Virus record (IMG/VR): IMGVR_UViG_3300034072_001021
Span: 62,001-126,000 of that record
DNA length: 64,000 nucleotides
Strand: one strand, 5' to 3'
The notes under the pieces are model-generated. The model was given only the letters and a program-made list of their open reading frames with translations, did no database searches and had not been told where the DNA came from. Below are positions 47,289-63,500 of this stretch, one piece after another; the stretch's first letter is position 1, and every line of letters begins with the position of its first letter. Made by a program: the position numbers and the translations under genes.

Positions 47289-47846
47289 CTAAAGGAGTTT
47301 AGTGACGTAGTACTCATGCAACAGAGACAAACGAATGTCTTCGGTCACATGACTGACACTGTGGTTGATGTAACTCGGGAAAATGTAGATGTCGCCTTTC
47401 TTCGGCGAGATCCGCAGATTAGCGAAGTGATGATTACGCATCGGCTTGGGATAACCACGAGCAGCATTACACCGAGGGTCGAACATGTTCAATGCATTCT
47501 CTGAATCCGACGGATAACAGATAGCGGAGATCACAGACCCAGGATGCAGGTGTGGGAATAGCCCTTCACCCGGAGGAATCCACTTGCCGTTTGTCTCGAC
47601 ATAGAATTCGTCCATTTCGTAATTGAAGCTGTGCTTCGAAAACTCCATGACAGCCGGGGTGATAATCTTGTCACGCATTTCAATGATGACAGGATAGTGT
47701 TCAGCCAAGACTTTTACCTGACTGTCATCTTCACCGCCCGTCATTGAATAGAGCGTGAACACCTCATTCGCAAACAAATCCATATCAAACTGATCGGCTA
47801 CGTTGAAGTGTGCGATCTCAGTGATCCATGGCTGCAAGTATTTCAT
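47289..47846 (-). CDS. Fe(II)/2-oxoglutarate oxygenase (TIGR02466-like)
   Basis: GGAGG RBS; PHLHPGSVISAICYP, FDPR, PKKGDIYIFPSYINHSV, IRLSL. Confidence 0.85.
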   Translation of the reverse strand: MKYLQPWITEIAHFNVADQFDMDLFANEVFTLYSMTGGEDDSQVKVLAEHYPVIIEMRDKIITPAVMEFSKHSFNYEMDEFYVETNGKWIPPGEGLFPHLHPGSVISAICYPSDSENALNMFDPRCNAARGYPKPMRNHHFANLRISPKKGDIYIFPSYINHSVSHVTEDIRLSLLHEYYVTKLL

Positions 47847-47847
47847 C

Positions 47848-48279
47848 TTAACCTCCCATGACAGAGCTAAGACCTTCCTCCGTGCACTCGAGTAGACAGT
47901 ACTTGACTGTCTGAGGTGCCCAGCCAGACTCCAACCAGTTTGGCATCGTCTTAAGACGCTCAATGATCTGGTCGTAAGTGGTGGGGTCTTTATCGTAAGT
48001 GACGAAGTAATGGTCGTGACCTAGGAACAGGTCTTCATCACGCAGGGTTTCGTAAATATCAATGCCATAGATCTCTTTAAGCTTGAACGCGTAAATGATC
48101 GCTACAGCATACGACTTGGCCGGATAGATCAATGGGAACGTTGCTTCCTTGAAATAGTGCAAGGCGTTCTCTACCAGCTCTTCTTCTTCGATAATCTCCA
48201 TGTTCTGGAAATCATCGGGATGATTCACTACCAGCTCTTCGTAGAGAAGCTGGTATTCCTTATACGGTTTGGAATTCAT
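47848..48279 (-). CDS. acidic hypothetical protein in the radical SAM cluster
   Basis: Coupled to both neighbours; YPAKSYAVAIIYA motif. Confidence 0.65.
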   Translation of the reverse strand: MNSKPYKEYQLLYEELVVNHPDDFQNMEIIEEEELVENALHYFKEATFPLIYPAKSYAVAIIYAFKLKEIYGIDIYETLRDEDLFLGHDHYFVTYDKDPTTYDQIIERLKTMPNWLESGWAPQTVKYCLLECTEEGLSSVMGG

Positions 48280-48703
48280 AATTGCTCACAAATGTGACCC
48301 GTAATTCAGGTTCGGGAGACGGTCTGACGTAATGAATCCAGCTGGCAGGGAATATGATCATTTTACCTTCTTCAGGGATAATCACGTTCTCACTACCGTC
48401 TGGCATGTTCATTACCAACTCACCCAATGAGTCAGTCAGGAATACCACTGAGGTGAATTCGTGAGGCAGGTGATCATGCGGCTTCACACCGACATCACCA
48501 ATGTGCACATGGTTAGCGCACAACCACAGGTCTTCACGTCCAGTGACCAACTGAGCCACAGGAAGAATGTGATCAATCGCCCATTGATTGAGTTTGCTCG
48601 AAGCAATGACGCCCAGATTGGGTTCAGCCAATAACTCAGCCAAAAGCCAATCTGGGACATCTACGCTAGAACATCCCATTTGTTTCGCATTCTCACCAGA
48701 CAT
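48260..48703 (-). CDS. Fe(II)/2-oxoglutarate oxygenase
   Basis: PHDH...TSVVFL, PEEGKMIIFPASWIHYV, RVTF (HxH...H...R); start uncertain (48703 or 48679). Confidence 0.8.
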   Translation of the reverse strand: MSGENAKQMGCSSVDVPDWLLAELLAEPNLGVIASSKLNQWAIDHILPVAQLVTGREDLWLCANHVHIGDVGVKPHDHLPHEFTSVVFLTDSLGELVMNMPDGSENVIIPEEGKMIIFPASWIHYVRPSPEPELRVTFVSNYEFQTV

Positions 48704-49686
48704 TCGTCTACCCCTAAGTGCGACATGACCGAGTGTATATCGCCGCGTGCACACCGATTGACGTGCATGCATTTACTACACAGGTCGCTAGTGCTCCACT
48801 TGATCAACTCAGTCAGATAAATTGATTCGTAGAACTCTTCGATAGACTCTGGTGTCCACGGTTGTTCAAGAGCAAACGCTTGATCGAAGATAGGGAACTT
48901 TTCAATCAGCGTAGGTGTATAGAACAACTCACCTTGCCGATAGGTCAGCTCTAAGCTATCTGTGGGAGGCTTGATCAGATAACGGTTGTACGGCGTATCG
49001 CGACACTCTTGAATGACATCGCAAAACTTACCAAACTCGTTCAAGAATAGTTGCCGATTGATCAGGTCATCAAACCCTCGGCGAACATGAGGGAAGACAT
49101 ACTCAACAAGCCTTCTCACACCAAAGTTCAATTCATGAAGATCTTGGTTGGCCTTCGGAGTAAAGTCACGTACAGAGTCACCAGTCATATTCACCGTCAA
49201 GTAAAGCAATTCGAACTTTACATCGGGTAGATGACTGATTACAAAGTCCACTCGACGTTTTACCAGATCTTGGTGTTTCTGGTTGTATGTGCTTTTGAGT
49301 GGAAACGGAGTTGCCAGTGTGAACGACTTACCTGCCATCAGTACATTCACTTTAGCACAGAGTTCTTCTAAACCATCATCGGACAATAACGCCAGCGGTA
49401 GCACGATACTTTCGTAACGTTCTGCTAGATCCTTGACCAACGGATGATCGAGAATATCAATCCCTGCCTTAGACGCAATCACGTCCACTGGCCCCACTGT
49501 GAACTCACGCAGCCGATAACCCCCTTGAGCCATCTGGTCAACCAATGTAATCAAACGCTCACGGTCATTATCGAAAGGACCGGGATCAAAGTCCCGGTCA
49601 ACCATGCAACCGACACACTGGTACTTACAACCCTGCAATATCTCAAGCGTCAGGTTAAACGCCTGGTTTGGAATTATTGCTGACAT
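48661..49686 (-). CDS. divergent radical SAM-like protein
   Basis: GCKYQCVGC (CxxxCxxC); GPVD where GGE is expected; C-terminal CSKC..VNRC...C cluster. Confidence 0.75.
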   Translation of the reverse strand: MSAIIPNQAFNLTLEILQGCKYQCVGCMVDRDFDPGPFDNDRERLITLVDQMAQGGYRLREFTVGPVDVIASKAGIDILDHPLVKDLAERYESIVLPLALLSDDGLEELCAKVNVLMAGKSFTLATPFPLKSTYNQKHQDLVKRRVDFVISHLPDVKFELLYLTVNMTGDSVRDFTPKANQDLHELNFGVRRLVEYVFPHVRRGFDDLINRQLFLNEFGKFCDVIQECRDTPYNRYLIKPPTDSLELTYRQGELFYTPTLIEKFPIFDQAFALEQPWTPESIEEFYESIYLTELIKWSTSDLCSKCMHVNRCARGDIHSVMSHLGVDECLVRMRNKWDVLA

Positions 49687-50707
49687 GACTAAGCCCCACT
49701 AGACAGTCACGGATCTTCATGCGCTCCATGATGTTGATGATCCCCTTCTCACTGCAGCTACTCATGTAGACGCACGTCATGCAGGGAGTGTCAGCCAAGT
49801 ACTCCATAGCTTTGTTCATGGCCTTCTGACGGGTATCGAGAAGATTCTCCATTGTCCAGGGCTTGGGGATGGTGAACTCGTCTTCAATAAACGGACAGTC
49901 GTCTTTGAGGAAGGGCACCCAGTACAATTTACCGCCGGTGTACAGCAAGTTCACCATAGTGCCTGTATGGTAGCACAGATCGGGATTACGGCGACGCTCA
50001 TCTTCACCAGACAACCCAGAATAGAACTGAGTGATGCGGTGTGACATGCGCTTGATATTCTCGCCAACAATCAGATCCTTGTTCGGTAAACGACCGTACG
50101 GGATATTCAAGATGTCATCTTTGTCCACAGGGAACTCGACATCAAATCCGTTCATCATCATTTCGTCAAAGTCTTCACCCACAGTCTCGTGAGTGCAGTT
50201 CACCACAAACCCAGCTTCGTTCAGATAAGCATCTTTAAGATGCTCTTTTACGAAGTTCAGTTTGGAGACGATCATGTCAGAGAACTTATTCGACTTGAAA
50301 AAGTGCGGAGCAGCAGGCATCAGGAAACGGACTGCTTTGCCAGGGATCGCGCGATCGATCTCTTCACACATCACCGCGTACTTGTCCATGTCTTTCTCAA
50401 GGAACGCAGCGTTGAAGGTCACCTGATGGAACTCTTGCGCCATCTCACGGAACACTGGGTGCTCCATGACTTCATTGACGTTATCGGCAGACATGTAGTC
50501 AGTAGGGCCAATACCGAGATCGAATGCAACGTAACCGTTGTCAACCATCTCATTGATCAATGCACTCAATTCAGGGATGTCATTAACATCCCCGCCCAGC
50601 GTACGATCGATCATGCAGCCAGAACAGCTGTGTTGACATCCACGGAAGATGTCAAGGGTGATTTCAAGACGTTGCCGGTGTTGAACCGACCCGTATGCCA
50701 TTTTCAT
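49655..50707 (-). CDS. divergent radical SAM-like protein, paralog of the 48661 gene
   Basis: GCQHSCSGC; GPTD; C-terminal CMTC..MSSC...C cluster. Confidence 0.75.
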   Translation of the reverse strand: MKMAYGSVQHRQRLEITLDIFRGCQHSCSGCMIDRTLGGDVNDIPELSALINEMVDNGYVAFDLGIGPTDYMSADNVNEVMEHPVFREMAQEFHQVTFNAAFLEKDMDKYAVMCEEIDRAIPGKAVRFLMPAAPHFFKSNKFSDMIVSKLNFVKEHLKDAYLNEAGFVVNCTHETVGEDFDEMMMNGFDVEFPVDKDDILNIPYGRLPNKDLIVGENIKRMSHRITQFYSGLSGEDERRRNPDLCYHTGTMVNLLYTGGKLYWVPFLKDDCPFIEDEFTIPKPWTMENLLDTRQKAMNKAMEYLADTPCMTCVYMSSCSEKGIINIMERMKIRDCLVGLSHVSNNSKPGV

Positions 50708-51626
50708 GTGAACCCCATTTATCGATTAGTCCGCGGAACCCATTGCAGGAGTTCTCCAAGGATTTGACATCACGTAAGTGCTCAGAGAGACAGTGACCGT
50801 TATACGGACAAGTCGAGCAGATAGGATTGCTATTGACTCGAGACTTCTCCAACTCACACCATTGCCGATATGCATCAAGGCTATCGAGCGTCAAGAAAAA
50901 CTCATTGTCGTTCTCATCGAACTCCAGTACAGCATAGTCGCCAGTCGGAGTGATGTAGACATGGTCATCACTGTACGCGTTACGAGTCTTCTCAAACGCT
51001 TCTTTGACCTGCGTCTCGTTTTCGAAGTAGAAGGTTCGTTCAGGATGTTCGATAACTGCCCAGACGAACTCTTCAAACTCCTTGTACGTCACATTTTGCT
51101 GGTTTGCCTGATTCGAGCTGTAAGGCTTGATCTCAGCGCTTTTCAGGTTACCCAGGAGGTTCATCGTCTGAACGTACAAGTCGGGCGTGACGGTGTCCAG
51201 AAAGGCCCTAGAAGCCAATGTCAGCACATTGAACGGCTGAGTCATCAGTAACATGTTCTGCAACACGTTCTCGTTACGCTCACGTGCACCGAAATCGTAA
51301 GACACTGAGAACTCGTAACACTGATCATGGACAATGTCAGGCATGAACGACAAGTTGGTCTGTATCACGATGTCATCGATACCACGTGCGTAGAGGATAT
51401 CGAGGATAGTGTACAGATACTCTTCCTTGAGTAGTAGAACTTCGCCACCATAGAGGTCAACGTGCCCGATGGTATAATGTTCCATGATCTCGTCAATCAT
51501 AGCCGCTACACGATCAGGACTGATGCACGTAACATCAGACAATTGCGTTGGTGTTAGGTAGCAGAAATCACACCGGAAGTTGCAGTAGTACCATGGATTC
51601 AGTGACACATTTAGATGCGTTTTCAT
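50664..51626 (-). CDS. radical SAM protein with SPASM/twitch-like C-terminus
   Basis: YCNFRCDFC, LYGGE, QTNLS, YITPTG, CSTCPYNGHC..EH...CNG. Confidence 0.9.
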   Translation of the reverse strand: MKTHLNVSLNPWYYCNFRCDFCYLTPTQLSDVTCISPDRVAAMIDEIMEHYTIGHVDLYGGEVLLLKEEYLYTILDILYARGIDDIVIQTNLSFMPDIVHDQCYEFSVSYDFGARERNENVLQNMLLMTQPFNVLTLASRAFLDTVTPDLYVQTMNLLGNLKSAEIKPYSSNQANQQNVTYKEFEEFVWAVIEHPERTFYFENETQVKEAFEKTRNAYSDDHVYITPTGDYAVLEFDENDNEFFLTLDSLDAYRQWCELEKSRVNSNPICSTCPYNGHCLSEHLRDVKSLENSCNGFRGLIDKWGSHENGIRVGSTPATS

Positions 51627-51754
51627 TTAGCTGCTCGTATGATCATGGTAATGGTCGACAGCTTAAACAAGTCCTCAACTAACCAGATGAACAGTGGTTC
51701 TTTTTCGACATACAGGTTCTTGAGATGATAATCGATGAATTCTTCTGTTCTCAT
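51623..51754 (-). CDS. 43-aa peptide (not in ORF track)
   Basis: MRTEEFIDYHLKNLYVEKEPLFIWLVEDLFKLSTITMIIRAAK; starts 2 nt after the upstream stop; its TGA overlaps the next ATG; AAGGG RBS. Confidence 0.6.
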   Translation of the reverse strand: MRTEEFIDYHLKNLYVEKEPLFIWLVEDLFKLSTITMIIRAAK

Positions 51755-51756
51755 GA

Positions 51757-52845
51757 TTAGCCCTTAGCAATGAGCTGTACGGATTCGTCCACGTAAGGCG
51801 TAGGGGTCATGTATTCTGACATCCCGTTGATCTCGATGATACGTGGAGCCAATGTCTTCATCTTCTTGCAGTGGTGTTCTACCAGCCCCATCTTTTTGGT
51901 ATCTGCAATGGTCTTCTTGCAACCATTGCAGATGCTGAACATAGGACAGACATAGCACGACTGCTTCATGGTCTGAATATCGTCAGCCTCTTGAAGAGGT
52001 GTGAAGAATTCGCCAGCCATTTCTTTTTCGAAGTCGACGGGATATGCGCCATCATCACCAAACGCACCACACGTGAAGTACCCACCGCCTGGCTGCATGG
52101 CACGGATACCTTCATCGCAGTTTCTGGCTAGTGGGCAAGTGGTGTTGGCAGACTTCAATCGCCGAGCCATCTGTTTGGTATTGTACTCCCACTCCATTAG
52201 GCCTGCATCGTAGATCTGAATGTAGTGTTCGTACATATCCGCTTGAGTGAAGAAATTATCCTCACTGCCCATGACGATGCCACGATTATTGATCTTGGGA
52301 CCAGAAGCCATGACGTAATTGATCTTGGCTTCTACACCGAGTTCCTTAGCCAACCTGACAGTATCAAGAACGGAGTGACGATTGTCTTCATCAATGACCG
52401 CAATGAAGTCAAGGCTGTATCCGATCATCTCTGTAAACAGTGCGTTTACATTCCTGAAGTCTTCTTCAGTGAAGACCGTGCCATCGCCCTTGATGCGTTT
52501 GTCACCATATTGGAATGATGTGGTGATGCCTAGACGTGGATGACGGAACAATTCTGTCCACAGCTCAGGCTTCTTGTAGAACGGCCAAAGGTTACTGGTG
52601 AAACTGATACTTGCCTCAGAACCCAGACGATCCAGCATCGCAATCATCTCCCAGTAATACTCAGGAGGCATCATGAGCGGATCACCACCATTCACAATGA
52701 TGGTCCGTGTCTCTGGATAACGAGTGATGAAACGTTCGATGTCAGCAATGGTGACAATGTCATCACGGTTATCTGACAGGTGAGTACTTGAGCAGAACGT
52801 GCACCTGAAGTTACAGGCTACCGTCGGCTTAACGATAAGATCCAT
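51757..52845 (-). CDS. radical SAM/SPASM protein
   Basis: ACNFRCTFC, NGGDP, FTSNL, CPLARNC, TCG, CYVCPMFSICNGC...HC. Confidence 0.92.
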   Translation of the reverse strand: MDLIVKPTVACNFRCTFCSSTHLSDNRDDIVTIADIERFITRYPETRTIIVNGGDPLMMPPEYYWEMIAMLDRLGSEASISFTSNLWPFYKKPELWTELFRHPRLGITTSFQYGDKRIKGDGTVFTEEDFRNVNALFTEMIGYSLDFIAVIDEDNRHSVLDTVRLAKELGVEAKINYVMASGPKINNRGIVMGSEDNFFTQADMYEHYIQIYDAGLMEWEYNTKQMARRLKSANTTCPLARNCDEGIRAMQPGGGYFTCGAFGDDGAYPVDFEKEMAGEFFTPLQEADDIQTMKQSCYVCPMFSICNGCKKTIADTKKMGLVEHHCKKMKTLAPRIIEINGMSEYMTPTPYVDESVQLIAKG

Positions 52846-52849
52846 TGCG

Positions 52850-53086
52850 TCACCGATTGTGCGGAAATGGTTTTTGTTTCATCAGTTCTGTCGCTTTGGC
52901 TGAGAATGGTTCTGAACCATCTTCCCTTGCAGACAACACATAAGCGAATTCTTTACCTGGACGATGTTCTAGCACGTAGAGTTTATCGCCGTGACGAGCA
53001 TGTAGAAACGCAGGATGATCACCGCATGCATCGGTTTGAATAACACATCCGGCGTACGCAACATCACCAACCTTGAAAAGAGCCAT
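52850..53086 (-). CDS. small hypothetical protein (SH3-like FKVGD start)
   Basis: GGAG RBS before MALFKVGD; ends 4 nt before the radical SAM gene. Confidence 0.6.
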   Translation of the reverse strand: MALFKVGDVAYAGCVIQTDACGDHPAFLHARHGDKLYVLEHRPGKEFAYVLSAREDGSEPFSAKATELMKQKPFPHNR

Positions 53087-53169
53087 GGTCAACTCCATTA
53101 AAATTATCATACCGATTAGCCTGTTATGTTTTAAATACTCGGTATTTTCTATAGACCATAACAGGAGCC

Positions 53170-54186
53170 ATGGAAATGGACAAAGTACACATTGTTGTTA
53201 GCCGTCTGATGAACAACTTCGGTATCCTTCCTCAGGGTATTGTGATCGGTGGAAAACGCGTGTTCTTCCATAACGACCCGCGCATGTCGGCTGATGGAGA
53301 CACCGTCCACTTTAACTTCGATTACATGATCACCGACGGTACCATCAAGATCGACAGTGACGTAGATGCAGAGAGTATTGTTCCTGCGCACATGTTGTCG
53401 ATCACCAAGCGGTATAACAAGTTCGAGCAAATGACCCGCCTTCGCAACTTTGCTACCGAGCAAGCAAAGAAGGGCAAGTTCGACATCGACAACTTCGTTG
53501 TGCCGGGTGTCTGGTACAACAAACAACAATCCGGTCTGTCTAACCTGGTCATTCCAGATGAAGAGACGGTCATTGTCAAACCGGCCGATGGTGCTCGTGG
53601 TATCGGTCAGTTCATGGTGAAACTGGATAAGATCCCATTCGTGGTATTTGTCGAGACACTCGATCGGTACCGCTTAGGGAAAATAACTGAAGAGCAGTTT
53701 TGGTTAGGACTCAATAAGTTCTCAGGTTGCTATGTCTATTCCACGGCTGGCGAACATTACGAGAACGAAGGTCTTCTTTCCCTGAAGAACCAAGGCTACG
53801 TAGTTCAGGGTTTTGTTAAAGACGTCTGCTCTGAATACCGACTCTTGACCGATCTTGATGGTAAGATCGCTTACTGTCAAATGCGAGGTATCCGCGATAA
53901 AGATCAGTCTGAATTCCCTCAGGCTACTGGGTCGGACACCAACAGCATCGAGGGCAGTGATATCGTCCCTATCGATGAAGTCGTTAATAAACGCACTCTC
54001 AGAGATCTGAATGCGGTTGCATCAAAAGTCGTTGGGCCTCTCAGTTCTATCGATCTCTTCTTAACCGAAGATGGTCGTTGGGGGATCTTCGAGTACTGCA
54101 ACCAGTTCGGCATCAAGGGCGTTCCAATGGAGACGACGTTCAAACTCCATTACGACTTTATTGAACGACTCATTGGAGATAAGTGA
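53170..54186 (+). CDS. ATP-grasp family ligase (RimK-like)
   Basis: VIVKPADGARGIG, YVVQGFV, EYRLL, SIDLFL...GIFEYCNQFG in ATP-grasp order; AGGAG RBS. Confidence 0.7.
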   Translation: MEMDKVHIVVSRLMNNFGILPQGIVIGGKRVFFHNDPRMSADGDTVHFNFDYMITDGTIKIDSDVDAESIVPAHMLSITKRYNKFEQMTRLRNFATEQAKKGKFDIDNFVVPGVWYNKQQSGLSNLVIPDEETVIVKPADGARGIGQFMVKLDKIPFVVFVETLDRYRLGKITEEQFWLGLNKFSGCYVYSTAGEHYENEGLLSLKNQGYVVQGFVKDVCSEYRLLTDLDGKIAYCQMRGIRDKDQSEFPQATGSDTNSIEGSDIVPIDEVVNKRTLRDLNAVASKVVGPLSSIDLFLTEDGRWGIFEYCNQFGIKGVPMETTFKLHYDFIERLIGDK

Positions 54187-54187
54187 C

Positions 54188-54376
54188 ATGTCTCAAGATT
54201 CAGTTGAAATGAAGTACGATCCAGCTGATGGCGGCATGGCCCCGTCCCCGAACATTGCCAGTCATTGGCGTACGTTCAATGGCGACACCGCATGGATGTA
54301 CAATCCGTGGACAGGTGAGCTGCGGGATGCACGCGATGTGGGTTCCGATCCACAAGGCATACTGATCACTCCGTAA
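54188..54376 (+). CDS. small conserved phage protein (62 aa)
   Basis: GGAG RBS; YDPA.G...HWR...AWMYNPWTG..RD..DVGSDP.G pattern. Confidence 0.65.
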   Translation: MSQDSVEMKYDPADGGMAPSPNIASHWRTFNGDTAWMYNPWTGELRDARDVGSDPQGILITP

Positions 54377-54383
54377 TAGCGGA

Positions 54384-54412
54384 CATAGGGGAGGGCTGAG
54401 CCCTCCCCTATG
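54384..54412. terminator. bidirectional hairpin between convergent genes
   Basis: Perfect 13-bp stem CATAGGGGAGGGC/GCCCTCCCCTATG. Confidence 0.7.
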
Positions 54413-54415
54413 CCG

Positions 54416-55411
54416 TTACTTCAGGATAACGTCGTACATCGCCTTAATGCGGCAACTATCATCCAGACCATCCTCGATAAATGAATGATGGAGGAAGCAG
54501 CGCATACCACAGCGGGAGTAATACTCACACGCAAAGCAGTTGTACTTCTCAACGAAACGAAGCTCGGCCTCGTCCTTTGCCATCAGTCCCTCTTTCTCAT
54601 CGAGAATAGAGTTCTTCCCGGCTTCACTCCAGCAGGTCGTCACCACATTGTCTTTGTTGACAATCTTGGTGGAACGACAGGTGGTCTCGTTGAACTTGTT
54701 TTCCTTCCAGTCCTTGATCGGATAGGAATTCGGGTACCGTTCATTGAGATGGATGTAGAGCTTACTGATCAGATCCTCGTCGGGCTGAAGATGCTCGTAC
54801 ATGTGACTCGGGATGTAATGGTCAAAGTAGACATTGAAGTTCTCACAGAGCCAGTCCACCTCGGCACCCTCTTTACCTTCTAGGAATGACTCGATGTTCT
54901 GCTTAGTGATCACGACATTGACTGTCTTGACGTAATCCTTGACTTTCACCAGGTTCTCGAAGAACTTCTTACGGTCTTCTGGGTTGAAACGCCCCGCAGG
55001 ATCGTAGGAGGTTGCAACGATACAGTTACCGTGCTTACGAAGGCGCTCAACAAGCGCTATAAGTCGATTTACGTGATAGTAGACAAGGTTGGTACCCAAG
55101 ACCAAGATAGCGTCGTCATAGTACTCCAGAACCCGTTTACCGGCTTCGTAGAATGCGTCGAACAACGAATCAGGATATTGGTCAAGGAACAACTCACCGC
55201 CAGTGAAATTGACGACGTACTGATCAGTTGGACTGGTATTGGCCAGCAACTGATCTACCTTGCCATGAATGTCAGTCATTCCGACAATAGAATCGTGATC
55301 TTGGTGGCAGAATGAACATCTCAGATTACAGTACTCAAAGAAAATAAGATGAGCCTCCTTTCGGAGGCCCTTCTTTTCCCTGAGTATGTCTACGACAGGG
55401 ATCAACTCCAT
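54416..55411 (-). CDS. radical SAM/SPASM-like protein
   Basis: YCNLRCSFC, FTGGE, LGTNL, TSYDP.GRF, TCRS, CW, CFACEYYSRCGMRC...C. Confidence 0.9.
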   Translation of the reverse strand: MELIPVVDILREKKGLRKEAHLIFFEYCNLRCSFCHQDHDSIVGMTDIHGKVDQLLANTSPTDQYVVNFTGGELFLDQYPDSLFDAFYEAGKRVLEYYDDAILVLGTNLVYYHVNRLIALVERLRKHGNCIVATSYDPAGRFNPEDRKKFFENLVKVKDYVKTVNVVITKQNIESFLEGKEGAEVDWLCENFNVYFDHYIPSHMYEHLQPDEDLISKLYIHLNERYPNSYPIKDWKENKFNETTCRSTKIVNKDNVVTTCWSEAGKNSILDEKEGLMAKDEAELRFVEKYNCFACEYYSRCGMRCFLHHSFIEDGLDDSCRIKAMYDVILK

Positions 55412-56466
55412 TACCAGTTGGCTCCTACGAGGGCCTCATTGAGCACAGAGAGATCCGCATTCAGAATGAACCGAATCAGGTTCTCATCGTACTTACCAGT
55501 ATCACGGAAAGCCATAGCAATGCGGTGTTCACCATTGAAGATGGCGTTGACACGCTCCATGCAGACTGCTGGGTCACCCGGATTCTCGACTGCCGACAGC
55601 AGCGAGAGGATCATGGACGCACGCTTGGCAGACGACTCGTCTTCCAGTACGTTCATCAGCGTGATGGCTTCTTTCAGCATGTTCTTCAGCCATGCATCAT
55701 TCGGCTTGAAGTCGTACAGGCCAGGACGCAGCAGTTGCTGGCTAGCCAGATGAGGCATGTTCACGCAGGCCTCGAACACCGTCGGTGCAGTCAGCAGACT
55801 ATCCAGATCACAACCACCTACTTCCCAGAACTTCTCACGAGTCAGGTGACGACCCCAAACTTCCAGCGCATCATGGGCGTTGCTGAGCGCAATGCGACGC
55901 AGGATGTTCTTGATGGTTTTCGGGATCTTGCCAACACGCTGCTCGGTACGCAGACGGATCAGACGCCATTCCAGCGACAAGGCATCCGGATCATCATTGA
56001 CCAGATCGACCATGGCTTCTTGGAAAGCTTCAGTGCGCTTGTAGACTTCTTCCACTTTAGCCGCAGTGAACGTGACAGAGCCGAGTACGTCTACACGAGG
56101 TTCGCCACCGGCACAGATGACAGTGTTGAACGTGGCTTTCTTGCACACCATGATCCAGCGGAAAGTGTCCAGGTCGATCGACGGCATGAGGGCCTTGATC
56201 AACGACGCGTACAGGCGCAGATAGGTGTCGCCATCGCAATAGATCATGGTCTTGTTTTCAGAAGCATGAGCTTCCTTCATTGCAGCCAGGAACTTCTCGA
56301 CGTCTACCGTATCCAGAGAAGTAGCCCAATACAGCTGCTTGCCGACTTCTTCGTGGGCAGCGGGGAAGTACTCATGGCCATGCTCGGGGGAGATGGTGAT
56401 GACATTGTGAGATCGGTCGATCCGACGCTCCGAGTCGACATACGTCGAATTAAACAGATGGTACAT
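55411..56466 (-). CDS. hypothetical protein in the radical SAM cluster
   Basis: Strong codon bias; overlaps both neighbours. Confidence 0.7.
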   Translation of the reverse strand: MYHLFNSTYVDSERRIDRSHNVITISPEHGHEYFPAAHEEVGKQLYWATSLDTVDVEKFLAAMKEAHASENKTMIYCDGDTYLRLYASLIKALMPSIDLDTFRWIMVCKKATFNTVICAGGEPRVDVLGSVTFTAAKVEEVYKRTEAFQEAMVDLVNDDPDALSLEWRLIRLRTEQRVGKIPKTIKNILRRIALSNAHDALEVWGRHLTREKFWEVGGCDLDSLLTAPTVFEACVNMPHLASQQLLRPGLYDFKPNDAWLKNMLKEAITLMNVLEDESSAKRASMILSLLSAVENPGDPAVCMERVNAIFNGEHRIAMAFRDTGKYDENLIRFILNADLSVLNEALVGANW

Positions 56467-57205
56467 GTTCGATCCCTTTCAAGAGTTCTTGACATTCCAG
56501 CATGGAGCTGCGGGCAGCAGCTTCAAGCTTAGCCACACCGTCCGGCTCTGCAATGGCAAGCAGACCAACGAACAGCGGATTGCGCTTGCTGGCGAAGTGA
56601 TGGAAGAGGTTCTTACCGGCAAAACAATACTTGTCGAACAGCATGGGGTTCCACGACAGTTCTTGTTGCTCTACCGAATTGAAGAAATTGGGGAACAGTT
56701 CATGATCGATCAGTTGGACGAAGTTGATACCGCGCAGGTCTTCACTTTCGTCTTTCTCAAACTGCTCGACCATCGATTTGGTATTCGGTGCAGTGTGCAG
56801 AGCAAACACCATGAGCGACAGAATGCGTTTGAGCCACTGTTCGATGATCTCTTCGTTTTCAGCGATGAAGTTGGCCGGATCGAAGTCCAGGAAATTCATC
56901 TCGCCCCGACAAAGCAGTAGGAGGTTGATCGCAAGATCTTCCATCTCACTGAATTTGACCAACAGCGCACTGTTGAGATACGACTTCAGCAACTCGAGTT
57001 TAGATTCTTGAGTGCTGAACGTAACCCGACAGTTGAGGTTCAAGTTGGTAAGGTACGTGAGGAACGTATCACCTTTGAACGCACTCTTGTCGTAGTCTAC
57101 GACGAATTGCACGTTCTCCTTAAACTTACGTTTCAGGTCATTGATCGGGATTGGGGCAGCGGTTTCGATGATTACCAACTCGCCCTTGTCTTGATTCTCG
57201 CTCAT
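56450..57205 (-). CDS. hypothetical protein in the radical SAM cluster
   Basis: TAGGAG RBS; operonic, directly after the Cys/His-tail gene. Confidence 0.7.
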   Translation of the reverse strand: MSENQDKGELVIIETAAPIPINDLKRKFKENVQFVVDYDKSAFKGDTFLTYLTNLNLNCRVTFSTQESKLELLKSYLNSALLVKFSEMEDLAINLLLLCRGEMNFLDFDPANFIAENEEIIEQWLKRILSLMVFALHTAPNTKSMVEQFEKDESEDLRGINFVQLIDHELFPNFFNSVEQQELSWNPMLFDKYCFAGKNLFHHFASKRNPLFVGLLAIAEPDGVAKLEAAARSSMLECQELLKGIEHVPSV

Positions 57206-57217
57206 GGTCGCTCCTAA

Positions 57218-57757
57218 TTACCGGCGGCCACGGTTACTGTGGCAGCTGCTGTGACAACTGGTGTGGCAGATGGTGTTGGTCAGGGTCAGGGTGGTGAAGC
57301 GGGTATTGAGCGCATATGCGACCCAGAGATCTTCACATGCCTGATTGAAGTCTGCCAAATTCATCTCGTTACCGTTTGCAAACGGCATGGCCACATTATT
57401 GGCAAATGCTGGAACAAACGCAACTACGTTAGCAACTGCTGTTTGATCACTGACTACCGTGGCACCAACTGAGTAGTGCGACATGTAGATCACGATACGA
57501 GTATTACGTACACCACCAAACAGATTGGTCACGTATTTGAGTGCGTTGATGACATTGGTGGCGTTGGTTTTATCCTGATCGCCCCAGCTGTCATTAGTCC
57601 ACGCAGCACCCGGTCCAGCTGTGGTTCCAGCAAACCATTCTGGAAGTGAGTACGCCGGATAGTTGTTGGTGCCCCATGCAATACCGGAAATGGCCCGGTT
57701 TCGAATCAGTGAGTTAGCGTTTGCAGTCATTCGACTGCGGCGCAGTTCTTCAGTCAT
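57218..57757 (-). CDS. Cys/His-repeat-tailed protein, putative substrate/precursor of the radical SAM cluster
   Basis: C-terminus ICHTSCHSSCHSNRGRR; starts 1 nt after the SPASM enzyme stop. Confidence 0.75.
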   Translation of the reverse strand: MTEELRRSRMTANANSLIRNRAISGIAWGTNNYPAYSLPEWFAGTTAGPGAAWTNDSWGDQDKTNATNVINALKYVTNLFGGVRNTRIVIYMSHYSVGATVVSDQTAVANVVAFVPAFANNVAMPFANGNEMNLADFNQACEDLWVAYALNTRFTTLTLTNTICHTSCHSSCHSNRGRR

Positions 57758-57758
57758 G

Positions 57759-58793
57759 TCACACCTTCAATATCAGGTTTGAATGTTGGTTTCTACCGGA
57801 AAGGTAACGGAGTGTGTTCTTCAAGCCACCGCATCGACCGTTCTGCCAAGGGAGTCTGTGACAATCACCTCCACATAGATCGAACACGTCGCAGCCTAAA
57901 CAACCCGGCTCCCATGTAAGCTCTTTTACAATTTCATTGACTCGACCGTCTGACGTCAAGAACGTCTCTATCGAATCGGTGATTTTGGCGTGGTGTTTTT
58001 GAGTGGCTGCATTAGGGCAGCCGGACAACGTACCATTGGAATTGATTGTGACCAGATTCTGTTCACAGTTCCGACAGTTAGTGTCTACCTTCACCACGTT
58101 CTTCTGGATCTTCTCTTCAAGAATATCCAAGGTCTTTATCCTGACCCGAGGAGAGCGTTCTTTATAACGTTTGAATAGCGCCAGATACCAATTGTCTTGC
58201 TCTTCGTTATTAGGGAAGATGTCAAGGTTCTCAGTAGCGCTGCCATCCAGCGTCAGTCGTTCGAGTGAACACTCTTGAATAGGGAGTGACTCCAGATGGT
58301 CCAAGAACCAATCTGGGGTCTTCTGTATCAGATCTTTACTGACCGATACCTTAACAGCAATACCAATGCCTTCATCGGACAACACTTGAAGGTTGTGCTT
58401 CCAGAGGTCGTATTGTTTCTGGTTGGACCACCTGATCCAATTGTCCCAGCTTGTCCCTATCCAGCTGCCGAAGTAATCCTTGATGAATGCGATCTGCTCA
58501 TCACTCATCTTGAACGTGAGATTACTGTTGGCGCACATGGTTACATTTTCCATGTGTTTGAATCTGTCTGCAAACCGCTTGAGCTTTTCAACAGGAACGA
58601 GGAAAGGCTCACCACCATGAAACTCGAAATGGTACTGTGTATCGTCAGGATATTGCTGGATGAACTGTTCTACCCAGTCGGCGGTTGCTTCTGGATCAAA
58701 CTGTGTTTTGTCGCCATTCTTGCCGTTGGTGAAACAGTGCTGGCAATTCAGGTTACAGGTTCCAGTCGTCTTGACGTAGATGACTTTATTCAT
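57759..58793 (-). CDS. radical SAM/SPASM peptide-maturase-like enzyme
   Basis: TCNLNCQHC, FHGGEP, NSNL, NCRNC..NLVTINSNGTLSGCP, CLGC..FDLCGGDC...C. Confidence 0.93.
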   Translation of the reverse strand: MNKVIYVKTTGTCNLNCQHCFTNGKNGDKTQFDPEATADWVEQFIQQYPDDTQYHFEFHGGEPFLVPVEKLKRFADRFKHMENVTMCANSNLTFKMSDEQIAFIKDYFGSWIGTSWDNWIRWSNQKQYDLWKHNLQVLSDEGIGIAVKVSVSKDLIQKTPDWFLDHLESLPIQECSLERLTLDGSATENLDIFPNNEEQDNWYLALFKRYKERSPRVRIKTLDILEEKIQKNVVKVDTNCRNCEQNLVTINSNGTLSGCPNAATQKHHAKITDSIETFLTSDGRVNEIVKELTWEPGCLGCDVFDLCGGDCHRLPWQNGRCGGLKNTLRYLSGRNQHSNLILKV

Positions 58794-58795
58794 GG

Positions 58796-59314
58796 TTAGA
58801 GCTTCTGTTCGATAAACAACTCGAGACCAAAACTGAGCATCACGGATTGTTCATGGTTGATGGCCTGGTGTTTGACACCACGCGGAATGTAAAGCATCTG
58901 TCCTTCTTCGAGCATGAAGTTACCACACTCGGTCAGGAACTCTTTTCGACCTTCCACCATGTAGATCACGACATCATCGAGATCGATGTGCATGGGAAAG
59001 CTCAAGGAATCTTTGGGTGACAGAAAGAGATGAGCAGATACGTAACCATAATGTCCATAGTGCTTGGCTAGTGCCGCAGCTACCTTGAACATAGTTTCGT
59101 TGAACCGCTCATAACCCTCGATCTTGACTGGACAGCAATCGACTTCCATCGCCTCCAGAACATCGGTAGGACCGTTCGCTAAAACAGACCCACCGTGTTT
59201 GATATATTTGACCAGTTGCTGGAGATAAGGATAGGGGCTTGCAAGAAGATCATCAATGCGAAGATCTTCCTTCTTAAGTCCGATCAAACCAAACTCAGAA
59301 ATTCGATGGACCAT
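58796..59314 (-). CDS. JmjC/Cupin_4 (ROX-like) Fe(II)/2OG hydroxylase
   Basis: AGGAGG RBS; SAHLFLSP...SFPMHIDLDDV...EGRK, LEEGQMLYIPRGVKHQA (HxD...K...H). Confidence 0.85.
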   Translation of the reverse strand: MVHRISEFGLIGLKKEDLRIDDLLASPYPYLQQLVKYIKHGGSVLANGPTDVLEAMEVDCCPVKIEGYERFNETMFKVAAALAKHYGHYGYVSAHLFLSPKDSLSFPMHIDLDDVVIYMVEGRKEFLTECGNFMLEEGQMLYIPRGVKHQAINHEQSVMLSFGLELFIEQKL

Positions 59315-63359: not shown

Positions 63360-63500
63360 TTCTCTTTCTCCGTTGGGATCTCCATCGATCTGAAGACCGA
63401 TTAACGGGGATCTTGGTGTACGGCACTTTTCTAAAAACAGACTGTGTCTAATATGGAATATCAAACAACTGGCATACCATTATCGTGGGAGACGCGTTAA

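What the first reader, a model, noticed from the sequence alone, without database searches (positions are those of the whole stretch)
47289..59314. Phage multi-enzyme modification cluster: 6 radical SAM(-like) proteins, 3 Fe/2OG oxygenases, an ATP-grasp ligase and a Cys/His-repeat substrate, coupled to a tail-fibre gene
Seen: six ORFs with CxxxCxxC (48661, 49655, 50664, 51757, 54416, 57759), all with C-terminal Cys clusters; two HxH...H oxygenases; one JmjC; one ATP-grasp; and one protein ending (CHxx)3-RGRR. From the tail-fibre gene at 60906 down to 54416, minus-strand genes overlap or are separated by 17 nt or less. The second half (53086 to 45927) is equally tight and ends in the endolysin. 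Known: SPASM radical SAM enzymes build thioether (sacti/ranthi) and aryl C-C crosslinks on peptides, and JmjC/2OG enzymes hydroxylate His, Arg, Asn or Asp. Inference: a RiPP-like pathway that matures a phage protein, giving either a crosslinked or metal-binding virion appendage or a released bioactive peptide. No glycosyl-, phosphoribosyl- or kinase-type DNA hypermodification genes are present, so a protein substrate is favoured. I recall multi-radical-SAM clusters in other large myophage annotations, so the cluster may not be unprecedented, but I know of no characterised product.
Basis: partly seen in the sequence, partly recalled or inferred. Interest (0 to 1): 0.92.

Follow-up and report, generated by a model that had tools for sequence, protein, structure and literature searches.

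The report
Multi-radical-SAM module maturing a Cys/His-tailed protein
A jumbo phage carries, next to its tail-fibre genes, a conserved and uncharacterised set of four to eight radical-SAM enzymes and iron oxygenases that always travels with one small protein ending in an invariant Cys-His repeat; hundreds of phages and some predatory bacteria share it, and it most likely builds a chemically cross-linked protein tail.

Summary
Six ORFs carry CxxxCxxC plus C-terminal Cys clusters. Three are Fe/2OG or JmjC-type oxygenases. One 179-aa protein ends in (CHxx)3-RGRR, and the genes are tightly packed downstream of two tail-fibre paralogues.

Comparative work sharpens the picture:
- **Core module:** the Cys/His-tailed protein, two orphan proteins (P251, P143) and radical-SAM enzymes A-D. 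It is syntenic in Pseudomonas phage pPa_SNUABM_DT01, Ralstonia phage RSL2 and Agrobacterium phage Atu_ph07.
- **Spread:** it occurs in 64-80 loci per IMG/VR scan and in Bdellovibrionota chromosomes.
- **The tail:** [VI]-C-H-x-[SN]-C-H-x-[SN]-C-H-x-x-R-x-R-R-COOH is nearly invariant across a family of about 570 sequence clusters, while the rest of the protein diverges to about 20% identity.
- **Co-occurrence:** no locus that reaches the expected position lacks the tailed protein, whether loci were found through it or through an enzyme.
- **ATP-grasp-like gene:** it is an accessory insertion on the opposite strand, not a core part.
- **Tail-fibre adjacency:** it recurs in two unrelated phage fibre types but is absent in the bacterial loci.

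Best reading: a RiPP-like, protein-level maturation pathway acting on the C-terminal tail. The chemistry and biological role are unproven. Papers only list these genes; none characterises the module.

The parts
60966..63464 (-). Tail-fibre paralogue 1 (832 aa)
   Evidence: Matches phrog_2163 (1.8e-135), phrog_13857 and other tail-fibre PHROGs. It is 36% identical to the next gene. Its orthologue is DT01 gp069.
59332..60906 (-). Tail-fibre paralogue 2 (524 aa), directly upstream of the module
   Evidence: Matches phrog_2163 at 3.6e-125. It is 69% identical to DT01 gp068. It holds repeated NNPH..TKAQVGL motifs.
58796..59314 (-). JmjC-like cupin Fe(II)/2OG oxygenase. The ORF can extend to a GTG at 59368.
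   Evidence: Pfam JmjC_2 48 bits and Cupin_2. H127, D129 and H167 are invariant in DT01, RSL2 and Atu_ph07 orthologues. Present in 46 of 56 loci.
57759..58793 (-). Radical-SAM/SPASM enzyme A
   Evidence: Pfam Radical_SAM 32.9 bits. Full-length but sub-threshold matches to the anaerobic sulfatase maturase (1e-15), PapB, DarE and YhhB; SPASM domain 26.7 bits against a 27-bit cut-off. Invariant Cys 3+8. Present in 47 of 56 loci.
57218..57757 (-). CH-tail protein (179 aa): a folded alpha/beta domain plus the C-terminal tail (CHx[S/N])3-RGRR. The tail is encoded at 57221-57268.
   Evidence: The tail is invariant in distant phages and present in 162 of 192 family representatives. AlphaFold2 pLDDT 89.9, with the tail at 77 then 50. 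No PDB fold match. The gene starts 1 nt after enzyme A.
56450..57205 (-). P251, a core orphan protein (phrog_20767)
   Evidence: Present in 56 of 56 loci. AlphaFold2 pLDDT 93.5. No PDB match by fold or sequence.
55411..56466 (-). P351, a frequent accessory orphan protein
   Evidence: Present in 38 of 56 loci. No family or PDB hit.
54416..55411 (-). Radical-SAM/SPASM enzyme B
   Evidence: phrog_1802 at 4.5e-34. Pfam Radical_SAM 24.9 bits, below threshold. Invariant Cys 3+8. Present in 55 of 56 loci.
54384..54412 (.). Perfect G+C-rich hairpin between convergent genes; a likely bidirectional terminator that ends the first transcription unit
   Evidence: Read directly from the sequence. It was not reported by the terminator scan, which requires a T-run.
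53170..54186 (+). ATP-grasp-like protein (338 aa), an accessory insertion on the opposite strand
   Evidence: The window protein has no family hit. 6 of 24 homologues hit GSH-S_ATP weakly, and single members hit R2K_2 and R2K_3. Invariant K137, GARGxG, D295 and E308. At this site in 5 of 56 loci, and elsewhere in L007.
52850..53110 (-). P86, a small protein that starts the second transcription unit (phrog_21763)
   Evidence: PHROG hit at 5.7e-9. Homologues are found only in close relatives.
51757..52845 (-). Radical-SAM/SPASM enzyme C
   Evidence: Pfam Radical_SAM 48.3 bits. Full-length sub-threshold matches to DynA and the anaerobic sulfatase maturase. Eight invariant C-terminal Cys; the N-terminal CxxxCxxC is present but not scored invariant there because one orthologue is cut at its start. 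Present in 54 of 56 loci.
50664..51626 (-). Radical-SAM enzyme D (one auxiliary-cluster motif)
   Evidence: Pfam Radical_SAM 32.9 bits. The family profile's best PDB match is the peptide epimerase YydG at 1.1e-8. Sixty invariant columns across 23 distant orthologues. Present in 54 of 56 loci.
49655..50707 (-). Radical-SAM-like enzyme E
   Evidence: No Pfam hit for the window protein. E and F are paralogues (hhalign probability 100%) but are not detectably related to A-D. CxxxCxxC is kept in 148 of 150 E/F ORFs and CxxCx4-6C in all 150. 3 of 15 members hit PF04055 weakly. GGE is replaced by an invariant GP[TV]D.
48661..49686 (-). Radical-SAM-like enzyme F
   Evidence: Same evidence as for E. 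Pfam Radical_SAM only 12.6 bits. E or F is present in 37 of 56 loci and expanded to 5-6 copies in marine type-2 loci.
48260..48772 (-). Small 2OG-Fe(II) oxygenase-like protein; the true start is probably internal, near 48700
   Evidence: 2OG-FeII_Oxy_5 21.5 bits, below the 27-bit cut-off. phrog_81 at 4.6e-9. The DT01 gp056 orthologue aligns from residue 35.
47848..48279 (-). P143, a core orphan protein (phrog_20737)
   Evidence: Present in 52 of 56 loci, including Atu_ph07, RSL2 and Bdellovibrionota. Invariant YP.KSY motif. No PDB hit.
47289..47849 (-). 2OG-Fe(II) oxygenase (PF13759). The ORF lists a TTG start at 47963, but the ATG at 47849 fits the orthologues.
   Evidence: Pfam 46 bits. 71% identical to DT01 gp054, aligning from residue 34. 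Present in 36 of 56 loci, often duplicated.
46642..47280 (-). P212, a lineage-specific orphan protein
   Evidence: 59% identical to DT01 gp053. No family hit.
45927..46640 (-). Lysozyme or transglycosylase-like protein that ends the gene string
   Evidence: phrog_4928 at 1e-67 and phrog_196 (baseplate hub, C-terminal part) at 1.4e-37. The DT01 orthologue is annotated 'putative transglycosylase'.

Best explanation
The region encodes a conserved protein-maturation module.

Its fixed components are a small protein with an invariant C-terminal tail, two orphan proteins and four radical-SAM enzymes. The tail reads [VI]-C-H-x-[S/N]-C-H-x-[S/N]-C-H-x-x-R-G-R-R-COOH. The orphans are P251 and P143. Of the enzymes A-D, three have a full SPASM cysteine pattern. 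A JmjC-type cupin, PF13759 2OG oxygenases, P351 and one to six divergent radical-SAM-like E/F paralogues are frequent additions.

Inferred mechanism: the flexible Cys/His/Ser/Arg tail of the folded CH-tail protein is the shared substrate.
- The SPASM enzymes would abstract hydrogen atoms to form intramolecular cross-links. Candidates are Cys thioethers, and/or His-to-Ser/Asn carbon-carbon bridges on the three H-x-[S/N] units.
- Enzyme D, whose nearest solved relative is the epimerase YydG, may epimerise a residue.
- The JmjC-like and 2OG oxygenases may hydroxylate His or Arg.

The product probably stays attached to its protein domain. In phages the module is made late, together with the tail fibres. 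It is presumed to act with them at the host surface, as a rigid cross-linked and possibly metal-binding end-piece.

Shown: gene content, synteny, motif invariance, obligate co-occurrence, fold confidence and distribution.
Inferred: that the tail is the substrate, every chemical step, and the link to fibre function.
For: - Synteny with DT01, RSL2 and Atu_ph07.
- The tail is invariant while the rest of the protein drops to about 20% identity.
- 162 of 192 representatives from a family of 570 sequence clusters end in the motif.
- In 56 loci with enough flanking sequence, P251 is present in 56, enzyme B in 55, C in 54, D in 54 and P143 in 52.
- The converse scan through enzyme D found no locus that covers the expected site and lacks the CH-tail gene.
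- The CH-tail gene starts 1 nt after enzyme A.
- The AlphaFold2 model shows a confident domain with a low-confidence terminal tail.
- The enzymes resemble peptide or protein maturases rather than nucleotide or cofactor enzymes.
- The JmjC_2 hit comes with an invariant HxD...H triad. From general knowledge, JmjC_2 is the family of ribosomal-protein Arg and His hydroxylases.
- A fibre gene lies immediately upstream in two independent fibre lineages.
- There is precedent for radical-SAM cross-linking at His in three-residue motifs (PMC11499958).
- There is precedent for radical-SAM maturation of a full-size protein with HxS repeats (PMC13128918).
Against: - There is no experimental or proteomic evidence for any modification, nor for the protein being in virions.
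- Sixteen residues is a small target for four to eight enzymes.
- No RiPP recognition element, leader or core boundary, protease or exporter was found.
- A Cys3His3 tail could instead bind a metal or an Fe-S cluster and serve as scaffold or electron carrier for enzymes that act on something else.
- The E/F proteins are radical-SAM enzymes by motif only.
- Bdellovibrionota loci show no fibre genes within the 10 kb examined on each side, so the fibre link may be a matter of co-expression only.
- In the RefSeq record for RSL2, the fibre neighbour ORF065 is labelled 'virion structural protein' but the CH-tail orthologue ORF068 is not. The basis of those labels was not checked.
Confidence: 0.5

Rival explanations
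1. The tail-fibre proteins, or other virion proteins, are the real substrates. The CH-tail protein would be an accessory factor, such as a metallochaperone, an Fe-S or electron donor, or a scaffold for the radical-SAM enzymes.
For: - Fibre genes lie directly upstream in two unrelated fibre lineages.
- CHxxCHxxCH resembles a metal or cluster ligand set.
- The number of enzymes exceeds what 16 residues seem to need.
- The E/F copy number varies widely while the tail stays the same.
Against: - The two fibre types share no detected target domain: the HMM built from the conserved fibre C-terminal domain of other lineages finds nothing in this window.
- Bdellovibrionota loci keep the CH-tail, P251, P143 and enzymes A-D without any fibre nearby.
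- The tail is predicted to be flexible and not part of a folded metal site.
Confidence: 0.2
2. The tail is a scaffold or precursor from which a small molecule, cofactor or short peptide is built and then released. PQQ, mycofactocin and scaffold-peptide (pearlin) pathways work this way.
For: - Invariant C-terminal residues acted on by SPASM enzymes are typical of PQQ and mycofactocin precursors (general knowledge).
- Many redox enzymes are present.
- Matrixin-type peptidases lie next to the module in one Bacteriovoracaceae chromosome.
Against: - No protease, exporter or downstream user enzyme is conserved in the module.
- The carrier is a 110-280-residue folded protein of lineage-variable length rather than a short peptide.
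- A late-gene, fibre-adjacent position in phages is hard to reconcile with cofactor supply.
Confidence: 0.12
3. It is a DNA or nucleotide hypermodification pathway, or another metabolic pathway unrelated to any protein substrate.
For: - Radical-SAM and 2OG enzymes do take part in some phage nucleobase modifications (general knowledge).
- Weak N-terminal similarity to viperin, MoaA and QueE models.
Against: - Those matches cover only the generic cluster-binding first 100 residues or so, and lie far below family cut-offs.
- No glycosyl-, phosphoribosyl-, kinase-, amidotransferase- or DNA-binding families are present.
- The module co-occurs obligately with the CH-tail protein.
- The module is also present in bacterial chromosomes.
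Confidence: 0.05
4. It is a phage-encoded counterpart of the bacterial HXS defence system. The matured repeat protein would block DNA entry of competing phages (superinfection exclusion), or act as an effector against the host.
For: - HXS uses two radical-SAM enzymes to mature a protein with His-x-Ser repeats that stops phage DNA entry (PMC13128918).
- The tail here contains three H-x-[S/N] units and a basic RGRR end.
Against: - The CH-tail protein shows no hit to the HxsA model.
- Only weak, sub-threshold hits to HxsB and HxsC.
- No obvious N-terminal signal peptide (read by eye) and no Pfam peptidoglycan-binding domain in the CH-tail proteins.
- No PADLOC defence model matches beyond generic radical-SAM similarity.
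- The genes sit in the late structural region.
Confidence: 0.08

Closest known systems
Radical-SAM/SPASM RiPP maturases: ranthipeptide PapB, sactipeptide synthases, and three-residue cyclophane synthases (triceptides, including His-C2 cross-linkers HtkB and HaaB; PMC11499958, PMC12373016)
   Same: - CxxxCxxC core plus a C-terminal 7-8-Cys SPASM pattern in A, B and C.
- A co-encoded ribosomal substrate with short repeated motifs. C-x-x-x spacing and H-x-[S/N] fit thioether and aromatic-X-X cyclophane logic.
- Full-length, if weak, profile matches.
   Different: - All matches are 5-10 times below the family cut-offs.
- No N-terminal RiPP recognition element; the cluster motif starts at residues 13-28.
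- The substrate is a folded protein of novel fold, not a leader-core peptide.
- Four to eight enzymes per locus.
- No protease or exporter.
- The substrate tail is invariant rather than variable.
HXS anti-phage system (HxsA-D; PMC13128918)
   Same: - Paired radical-SAM enzymes mature a full-size protein carrying His-x-Ser repeats.
- It belongs to phage-bacterium conflict.
- A small partner protein is required.
   Different: - HxsA is bacterial and exported, and has a peptidoglycan-binding domain with internal repeats lacking Cys.
- Here the repeats are C-terminal, each preceded by Cys and followed by RGRR.
- No hit to the HxsA model, and sub-threshold hits to HxsB and HxsC.
QhpD/QhpC of quinohemoprotein amine dehydrogenase, and the anaerobic sulfatase maturase (general knowledge)
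   Same: - SPASM enzymes that modify Cys residues within a protein that keeps the modification.
- The anaerobic sulfatase maturase is the top NCBIfam neighbour of enzyme A (1.2e-15, full length).
- The last repeat, C-H-x-x-R, echoes the sulfatase motif C-x-P/A-x-R in its +4 Arg.
   Different: - Score 57 bits against a 349-bit cut-off.
- Position +2 is not Pro or Ala.
- No sulfatase or dehydrogenase partner.
- Multiple enzymes and added oxygenases.
JmjC ribosomal oxygenases (YcfD/RoxA, NO66, MINA53; Pfam JmjC_2; general knowledge)
   Same: - Pfam JmjC_2 hit above the cut-off, with an invariant HxD...H triad.
- That family hydroxylates protein Arg and His, which are the invariant residues of the tail.
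   Different: - Only the last 36 residues of the Pfam model are matched.
- The protein is 170-190 aa, with no dimerisation or winged-helix domains.
- The substrate is untested.
Annotated multi-radical-SAM clusters of jumbo phages: pPa_SNUABM_DT01 (PMC8541153), RSL2, RSF1, FLC6 and S13 (PMC8066314, PMC11898562), and Aeromonas phage 332-Vera (PMC12390700)
   Same: For DT01, the Ralstonia/Burkholderia group and Atu_ph07 these are the same genes by orthology. 332-Vera is a literature report only; no sequence of it was examined.
   Different: The papers only list the genes ('six radical SAM genes', 'highly unusual') and suggest DNA repair or metabolism. None of the papers read mentions the Cys/His-tailed protein, the module definition, its distribution or the bacterial copies.

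Membership tests
Radical SAM superfamily (PF04055) | CxxxCxxC motif that binds the [4Fe-4S] cluster | tested here: met
   Present in all six window ORFs. Kept in 426 of 429 homologous ORFs across 87 loci.
Radical SAM superfamily (PF04055) | Profile score above Pfam's gathering threshold (29.5 bits) | tested here: inconclusive
   Met for 51757 (48.3 bits), 50664 (32.9) and 57759 (32.9). 54416 scores 24.9 bits. 48661 scores 12.6 bits and 49655 has no hit. E and F are not detectably related to A-D by hhalign; 3 of 15 E/F members hit weakly.
Radical SAM superfamily (PF04055) | GGE-type motif that binds SAM | tested here: inconclusive
   GGE or GGD is present in A-D. In E and F it is replaced by an invariant G-P-[TV]-D. 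SAM binding is untested.
SPASM/twitch auxiliary-cluster domain (TIGR04085) | C-terminal 7-8 Cys (SPASM) or about 4 Cys (twitch), including CxxCx5C | tested here: met
   Eight invariant C-terminal Cys in A, B and C; five in D; four in E and F. The TIGR04085 score for A is 26.7 bits against a 27-bit cut-off.
RiPP biosynthetic system | A ribosomal precursor co-encoded with its modifying enzymes | tested here: met
   Obligate co-occurrence in both directions.
RiPP biosynthetic system | Leader/core organisation, a recognition element (RRE), and a leader protease or exporter | tested here: not met
   No PqqD or RRE, peptidase or transporter family in the window module. The N-terminal part is a folded 165-residue domain.
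RiPP biosynthetic system | A demonstrated post-translational modification of the precursor | not testable with these tools
   This needs mass spectrometry.
HXS system (HxsA/B/C/D) | Matches to the equivalog models for HxsA (repeat protein), HxsB and HxsC | tested here: not met
   The NCBIfam scan of the CH-tail protein returned no HxsA hit. HxsB scores 30.7 bits against a 370-bit cut-off, and HxsC 22.7 against 268.
Three-residue cyclophane (triceptide) systems | Repeated aromatic-X-X motif in the precursor | tested here: met
   H-x-[S/N] occurs three times. The third position is S or N in 163-164 of 164 tails for the first two units, and S, A or N in the third unit.
Three-residue cyclophane (triceptide) systems | The enzyme belongs to the XyeB, GrrM, FxsB, YhhB or AmcB families | tested here: not met
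   Best scores are 49 bits (YhhB, cut-off 445) and 46.7 bits (AmcB, cut-off 425).
Anaerobic sulfatase maturase | TIGR03942 equivalog score, and the target motif C/S-x-P/A-x-R | tested here: not met
   57.5 bits against a 349-bit cut-off. The last repeat has C-H-x-x-R, with G, S, C, N, T or A at position +2.
JmjC / cupin Fe(II)-2OG oxygenase | HxD/E...H facial triad and a Pfam score above the cut-off | tested here: met
   JmjC_2 scores 48 bits against a 22-bit cut-off. H127, D129 and H167 are invariant.
2OG-FeII_Oxy_5 (PF13759) | Pfam score above 27 bits | tested here: met
   47289 scores 46 bits. The second copy, 48260, scores 21.5 bits and fails, but hits phrog_81.
ATP-grasp superfamily | A profile match to an ATP-grasp family | tested here: inconclusive
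   No hit for the window protein. 6 of 24 homologues hit GSH-S_ATP (best 1.4e-4), and single members hit R2K_2, R2K_3 and ATP-grasp_3. The invariant K, GxRGxG and D...E pattern is compatible. No structure was predicted.
Phage tail fibre | Matches to tail-fibre or virion-structural families | tested here: met
   phrog_2163, phrog_13857, phrog_2712 and others.

The most novel reading that the evidence does not exclude
Jumbo phages and predatory Bdellovibrionota share a previously unrecognised class of protein-derived structure. A folded carrier protein has its invariant (Cys-His-x-Ser/Asn)3-Arg-Gly-Arg-Arg tail turned, by a cascade of four or more radical-SAM enzymes and oxygenases, into a polycyclic and possibly metal-binding end-piece. 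That end-piece would be used at the envelope of Gram-negative prey or hosts, during adsorption, penetration or invasion. This would be the first radical-SAM-matured virion or attack component, and a new RiPP-like class defined by a protein-sized precursor of novel fold.
Probability: 0.25. Interest if true: 0.9.

Novelty: new variant of a known kind. Interest (0 to 1): 0.8.

Why it matters
Radical-SAM/SPASM maturation is known for small peptides and a few enzymes' own subunits. It has not been shown for a phage structural or host-attack function.

Here a sharply defined module recurs in many places:
- 344 IMG/VR stretches encode a relative of enzyme D, and the best 80 loci were examined.
- About a dozen isolated jumbo phages of Pseudomonas, Ralstonia, Burkholderia, Agrobacterium and Sinorhizobium carry it.
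- So do chromosomes of predatory Bdellovibrionota.

Two of its core proteins have confident predicted folds with no match in the PDB.

It gives enzymologists a compact, testable substrate: 16 invariant residues and four to eight candidate enzymes. It gives phage biologists a candidate explanation for the 'highly unusual' radical-SAM gene sets noted in jumbo-phage genome papers. If the product sits on tail fibres, it would be a new type of post-translational chemistry in host recognition.

Tried and rejected
- **Fold of the CH-tail protein.** Foldseek found nothing in the PDB. In BFVD it found only uncharacterised phage relatives.
- **Fold and sequence of P251, P351 and P143.** No PDB match by fold or profile. 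Low-probability hints of PP-loop ATPases for P251 were judged to be noise.
- **ATP-grasp identity of 53170-54186.** Single-sequence and profile searches against Pfam, NCBIfam, PHROGs and the PDB, and hhalign against the DT01 R2K_2 protein, all failed. Only scattered weak hits among homologues remain.
- **The 62-aa ORF after the ATP-grasp gene (54188-54376) as a graspetide-type precursor.** It has no homologue in any fetched locus, so the idea was dropped.
- **Defence-system membership.** PADLOC gave only generic viperin-like N-terminal similarity.
- **Sigma-70 promoter and terminator scan.** Counts did not exceed those in shuffled sequence. phiKZ-like phages use their own polymerases, so the promoter scan is uninformative.
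- **Literature search for the motif strings.** It matched only German words.
- **Virion proteomics for RSL2 and RSF1.** The original paper is not in the library.
- **Copy-number correlation.** No simple relation was seen between the number of CH repeats or CH-tail genes and the number of radical-SAM genes.
- **Assigning a specific reaction to each enzyme from its nearest families.** All neighbours are similarly distant, so no assignment was made.

Full report
**What is in the window**

On the minus strand from 63464 down to 45927 lies an almost uninterrupted string of genes. In order they are:
- two tail-fibre paralogues (60966-63464 and 59332-60906), matching phrog_2163, phrog_13857 and tail-fibre PHROGs at E down to 1e-135;
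- a JmjC-like cupin (58796-59314);
- radical-SAM enzyme A (57759-58793);
- a 179-aa protein ending in CHTS-CHSS-CHSN-RGRR (57218-57757);
- two orphan proteins, P251 and P351;
- radical-SAM enzyme B (54416-55411).

A perfect hairpin follows at 54384-54412. Next comes a plus-strand cassette holding an ATP-grasp-like gene (53170-54186). The minus-strand string then resumes:
- P86;
- radical-SAM enzymes C and D;
- two radical-SAM-like paralogues, E and F;
- a small 2OG oxygenase-like protein;
- P143;
- a PF13759 2OG oxygenase;
- P212;
- a lysozyme or transglycosylase-like protein.

The window is identical to part of IMG/VR contig UViG_3300034072_001021, which is 259,140 bp long (L008).

**How solid the family assignments are**

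- **Enzymes A-D.** A, C and D pass Pfam's Radical_SAM threshold; B falls just below it. All four belong to phrog_1802 and are mutually related by hhalign at 94-97% probability.
- **SPASM pattern.** A, B and C keep eight C-terminal cysteines. D keeps five.
- **Enzymes E and F.** They are clear paralogues of each other but are not detectably related to A-D. Their radical-SAM status rests on three things. First, the CxxxCxxC motif is kept in 148 of 150 homologues and the CxxCx4-6C motif in all 150. Second, a few members give weak Pfam hits. Third, an invariant GP[TV]D sits where GGE normally lies.
- **Nearest characterised families.** NCBIfam places A and C nearest to the anaerobic sulfatase maturase, PapB, DarE, DynA and cyclophane synthases. 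It places D nearest to viperin and YydG. All scores are far below family cut-offs. A profile of D finds the peptide epimerase YydG as the best solved structure, at 1.1e-8. These are peptide- or protein-modifying-type enzymes, but none belongs to a characterised family.
- **Cupin.** It passes JmjC_2 and has an invariant HxD...H triad.
- **ATP-grasp.** The call is weak.

**The Cys/His-tailed protein**

Homologues in DT01, RSL2 and Atu_ph07 share only about 22-49% identity with the window protein, yet the last 16 residues are nearly identical.

A search of 5.8 billion proteins gave 49 relatives, many on contigs of up to 274 kb. A profile search of 1.84 billion cluster representatives gave 570 hits at E <= 0.001 and 205 at E <= 1e-10.

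Of 192 sequences examined, 162 end exactly in CHxxCHxxC[H/N]xxRxRR-COOH. The position-specific consensus is [VI]-C-H-x-[S/N]-C-H-x-[S/N]-C-H-x-[S/A/N]-R-[G/S]-R-R. The remainder are close variants with two or four repeats, one extra Gly, or a different end.

AlphaFold2 gives a confident alpha/beta domain (pLDDT 89.9, pTM 0.82). Confidence falls to 77 and then 50 over the last two ten-residue blocks, which hold the tail. The fold has no PDB match. In BFVD it matches only uncharacterised phage proteins, including three 504-660-aa paralogues in one uncultured myovirus.

In marine 'type 2' loci the protein is only 128 aa, and it is duplicated in tandem. Only its last 45 residues or so (helix, strand and tail) align with the window protein.

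**Co-occurrence**

I built HMMs for every gene family of the cluster and scanned 80 IMG/VR loci found through the CH-tail protein. In the 56 loci with at least 3 kb upstream and 9 kb downstream, the counts are:

| Family | Loci (of 56) |
|---|---|
| P251 | 56 |
| Enzyme B | 55 |
| Enzyme C | 54 |
| Enzyme D | 54 |
| P143 | 52 |
| Enzyme A | 47 |
| Cupin | 46 |
| P351 | 38 |
| E or F | 37 |
| PF13759 oxygenase | 36 |
| ATP-grasp | 5 |

Loci carry two to eight radical-SAM(-like) genes, most often four or six.

The converse scan used enzyme D as bait. It found 344 matching stretches, of which the best 80 were fetched. Of these, 64 hold the CH-tail gene. The other 16 all end before the place where it is expected.

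The ATP-grasp gene occupies the same opposite-strand site in only a subset of close relatives. It sits in an unrelated early-gene-like region in another phage, so I treat it as an inserted cassette.

**Link to tail fibres**

In the window's lineage and in RSL2, the two fibre paralogues directly precede the cupin.

In other lineages the gene directly upstream is a different fibre. It has a conserved C-terminal domain of about 150 aa that matches phrog_22593, phrog_19602 and phrog_6427 and contains a 'YADLAEKY' motif. I found it in 41 of the first 87 loci, always just upstream of the module or of the CH-tail genes.

Adjacency to two unrelated fibre types, always in the same orientation, argues for a functional or at least regulatory link.

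**Outside phages**

A scan of one genome per prokaryotic species found 22 full-length relatives of enzyme D. Fifteen to sixteen are in Bdellovibrionota metagenome-assembled genomes (MAGs), mostly Bacteriovoracaceae and Bdellovibrionaceae. Fifteen of the 22 loci also contain a CH-tail gene; several of the rest are short or truncated contigs.

Two loci lie on contigs of 2.4 Mb (L185) and 2.8 Mb (L183). L185 carries the CH-tail gene, P251, P143 and enzymes A-E. L183 shows only enzymes A, C and D and P143 within the fetched 21 kb. Both are flanked by cellular genes:
- a DinG-like helicase;
- matrixin-type peptidases;
- an FGE-sulfatase-domain protein;
- a 2274-aa RCC1/Big_2 surface-type protein.

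A third locus, L188, on a 247-kb contig, has the serine hydroxymethyltransferase gene beside the module. No fibre genes were found within 10 kb. A few hits in other MAGs (Marinovum, Rhodobacteraceae, Rickettsiales) sit on contigs of 32-113 kb. Several of these contain the fibre C-terminal domain, so they may be mis-binned phage contigs.

**Interpretation**

The most economical reading is that the invariant, flexible C-terminal tail is the common substrate of the co-encoded enzymes. The residues that never vary are Cys, His, Ser/Asn and Arg. These are the residues that SPASM enzymes and JmjC_2 oxygenases act on:
- SPASM enzymes form thioethers at Cys and cyclophanes on aromatic-X-X motifs, including His (PMC11499958).
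- JmjC_2-type oxygenases hydroxylate protein His and Arg (general knowledge).

The best-characterised analogue is the bacterial HXS system. There, two radical-SAM enzymes mature a full-size protein with HxS repeats (PMC13128918). Membership of that system was tested and not met.

No protease or exporter is conserved, so I expect the modified tail to stay on its protein. The role at the fibre, the metal-binding idea and each chemical step are inferences.

The main rival is that the tail is a metal or cluster site serving enzymes that act on fibres or something else. The present data cannot exclude it.

**Prior knowledge**

Genome papers list the genes in three ways:
- cupin, Fe-S oxidoreductase, radical-SAM and 2OG proteins shared by FLC6, RSF1 and S13 (PMC8066314, PMC11898562);
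- eight radical-SAM genes in a structural cluster, called 'highly unusual' (PMC12390700).

A comparative review of 224 jumbo phages does not mention radical-SAM or JmjC genes at all (PMC7824862). I found no paper describing the tailed protein, the module or its distribution.

**Verdict**

The feature is real, conserved and uncharacterised. It needs three corrections: the ATP-grasp gene is not a core part, the precursor is a protein with a folded domain rather than a leader peptide, and the fibre link is not universal. There is also one addition: the bacterial copies in predatory Bdellovibrionota.

Noticed in passing
window 53111-54412: The ATP-grasp-like gene forms its own plus-strand cassette. 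On one side is a 59-nt divergent intergenic region (53111-53169). On the other is a perfect hairpin (54384-54412), placed 3 nt beyond the stop codon of radical-SAM enzyme B. A 62-aa ORF (54188-54376) follows the ATP-grasp gene; it has no homologue in any fetched locus other than the two that are the window's own contig.
   Followed up: partly
window 57238-57276: The CHxS repeat is also a 12-nt DNA tandem repeat (3.2 copies, 77% matches). The protein repeat may therefore have arisen, or be maintained, by DNA-level duplication.
   Followed up: no
L183 (2.84-Mb contig) and L185 (2.45-Mb contig); also L172, L175, L178, L188, L189: The core module occurs in Bdellovibrionota (predatory bacteria) MAGs. 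On the Mb-sized contigs it is flanked by cellular genes: a DinG-like helicase, two matrixin-type peptidases and an FGE-sulfatase-domain protein. Their gene order differs from the phages (A, E, CH-tail, A, P251, F, B, C, D, P143).
   Followed up: partly
L057-L078 and L084-L086 (e.g. L074:9707-20476): A second architecture is found in marine viral contigs of about 120-160 kb. A fibre gene is followed by two tandem 128-aa CH-tail genes, one F-type and four E-type radical-SAM-like paralogues. B, P143, D and C lie on the opposite strand, and A plus the cupin lie beyond them. No isolated phage in the 50,697-record collection matched enzyme A or D with this architecture.
   Followed up: partly
L035:5390-8395, L038:7081-8424, L053:6496-7797, L059:1974-3161, L074:8633-9706, L087:5416-7293 and others: A conserved C-terminal domain of about 150 aa ('YADLAEKY...GRVPVKV') ends the fibre gene directly upstream of the module in 41 of the first 87 loci fetched. 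It matches phrog_22593, phrog_19602 and phrog_6427. It is absent from this window's fibres.
   Followed up: partly
window 59332-60906 and 60966-63464: The two fibre paralogues share an N-terminal region of about 440 aa (36% identity). They also share several copies of a roughly 50-aa repeat containing NNPH..TKAQVGL..V.NF...A.
   Followed up: no
window 56450-57205 and 47848-48279: P251 (AlphaFold2 pLDDT 93.5) and P143 are universal module members. P251 has no PDB match by fold or sequence, and P143 has none by sequence profile. P143 has an invariant Y-P-x-K-S-Y motif and no Cys or His.
   Followed up: partly
L165:7531-8905; L155:2423-2935: Variant tails exist. Examples are CHSSCHSNVTCYNSRGRR (insertion, with Tyr in place of His) and a two-repeat form, CHSNCHINRSRR. 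Other family members end in CHGDGPG...GGV or CHGSI instead of RGRR.
   Followed up: no
window 51627-51756: A 130-nt non-coding gap lies between radical-SAM enzymes C and D in an otherwise tightly packed string. DT01 has a 181-nt gap at the same place, while L004 has 3 nt.
   Followed up: no
Isolated phages carrying the module: All isolates with the module are jumbo phages (222-490 kb) of soil or plant-associated Proteobacteria. One of them, Burkholderia phage S13, is reported to be flagella-dependent (PMC11898562). Whether the module correlates with a receptor type was not examined.
   Followed up: no
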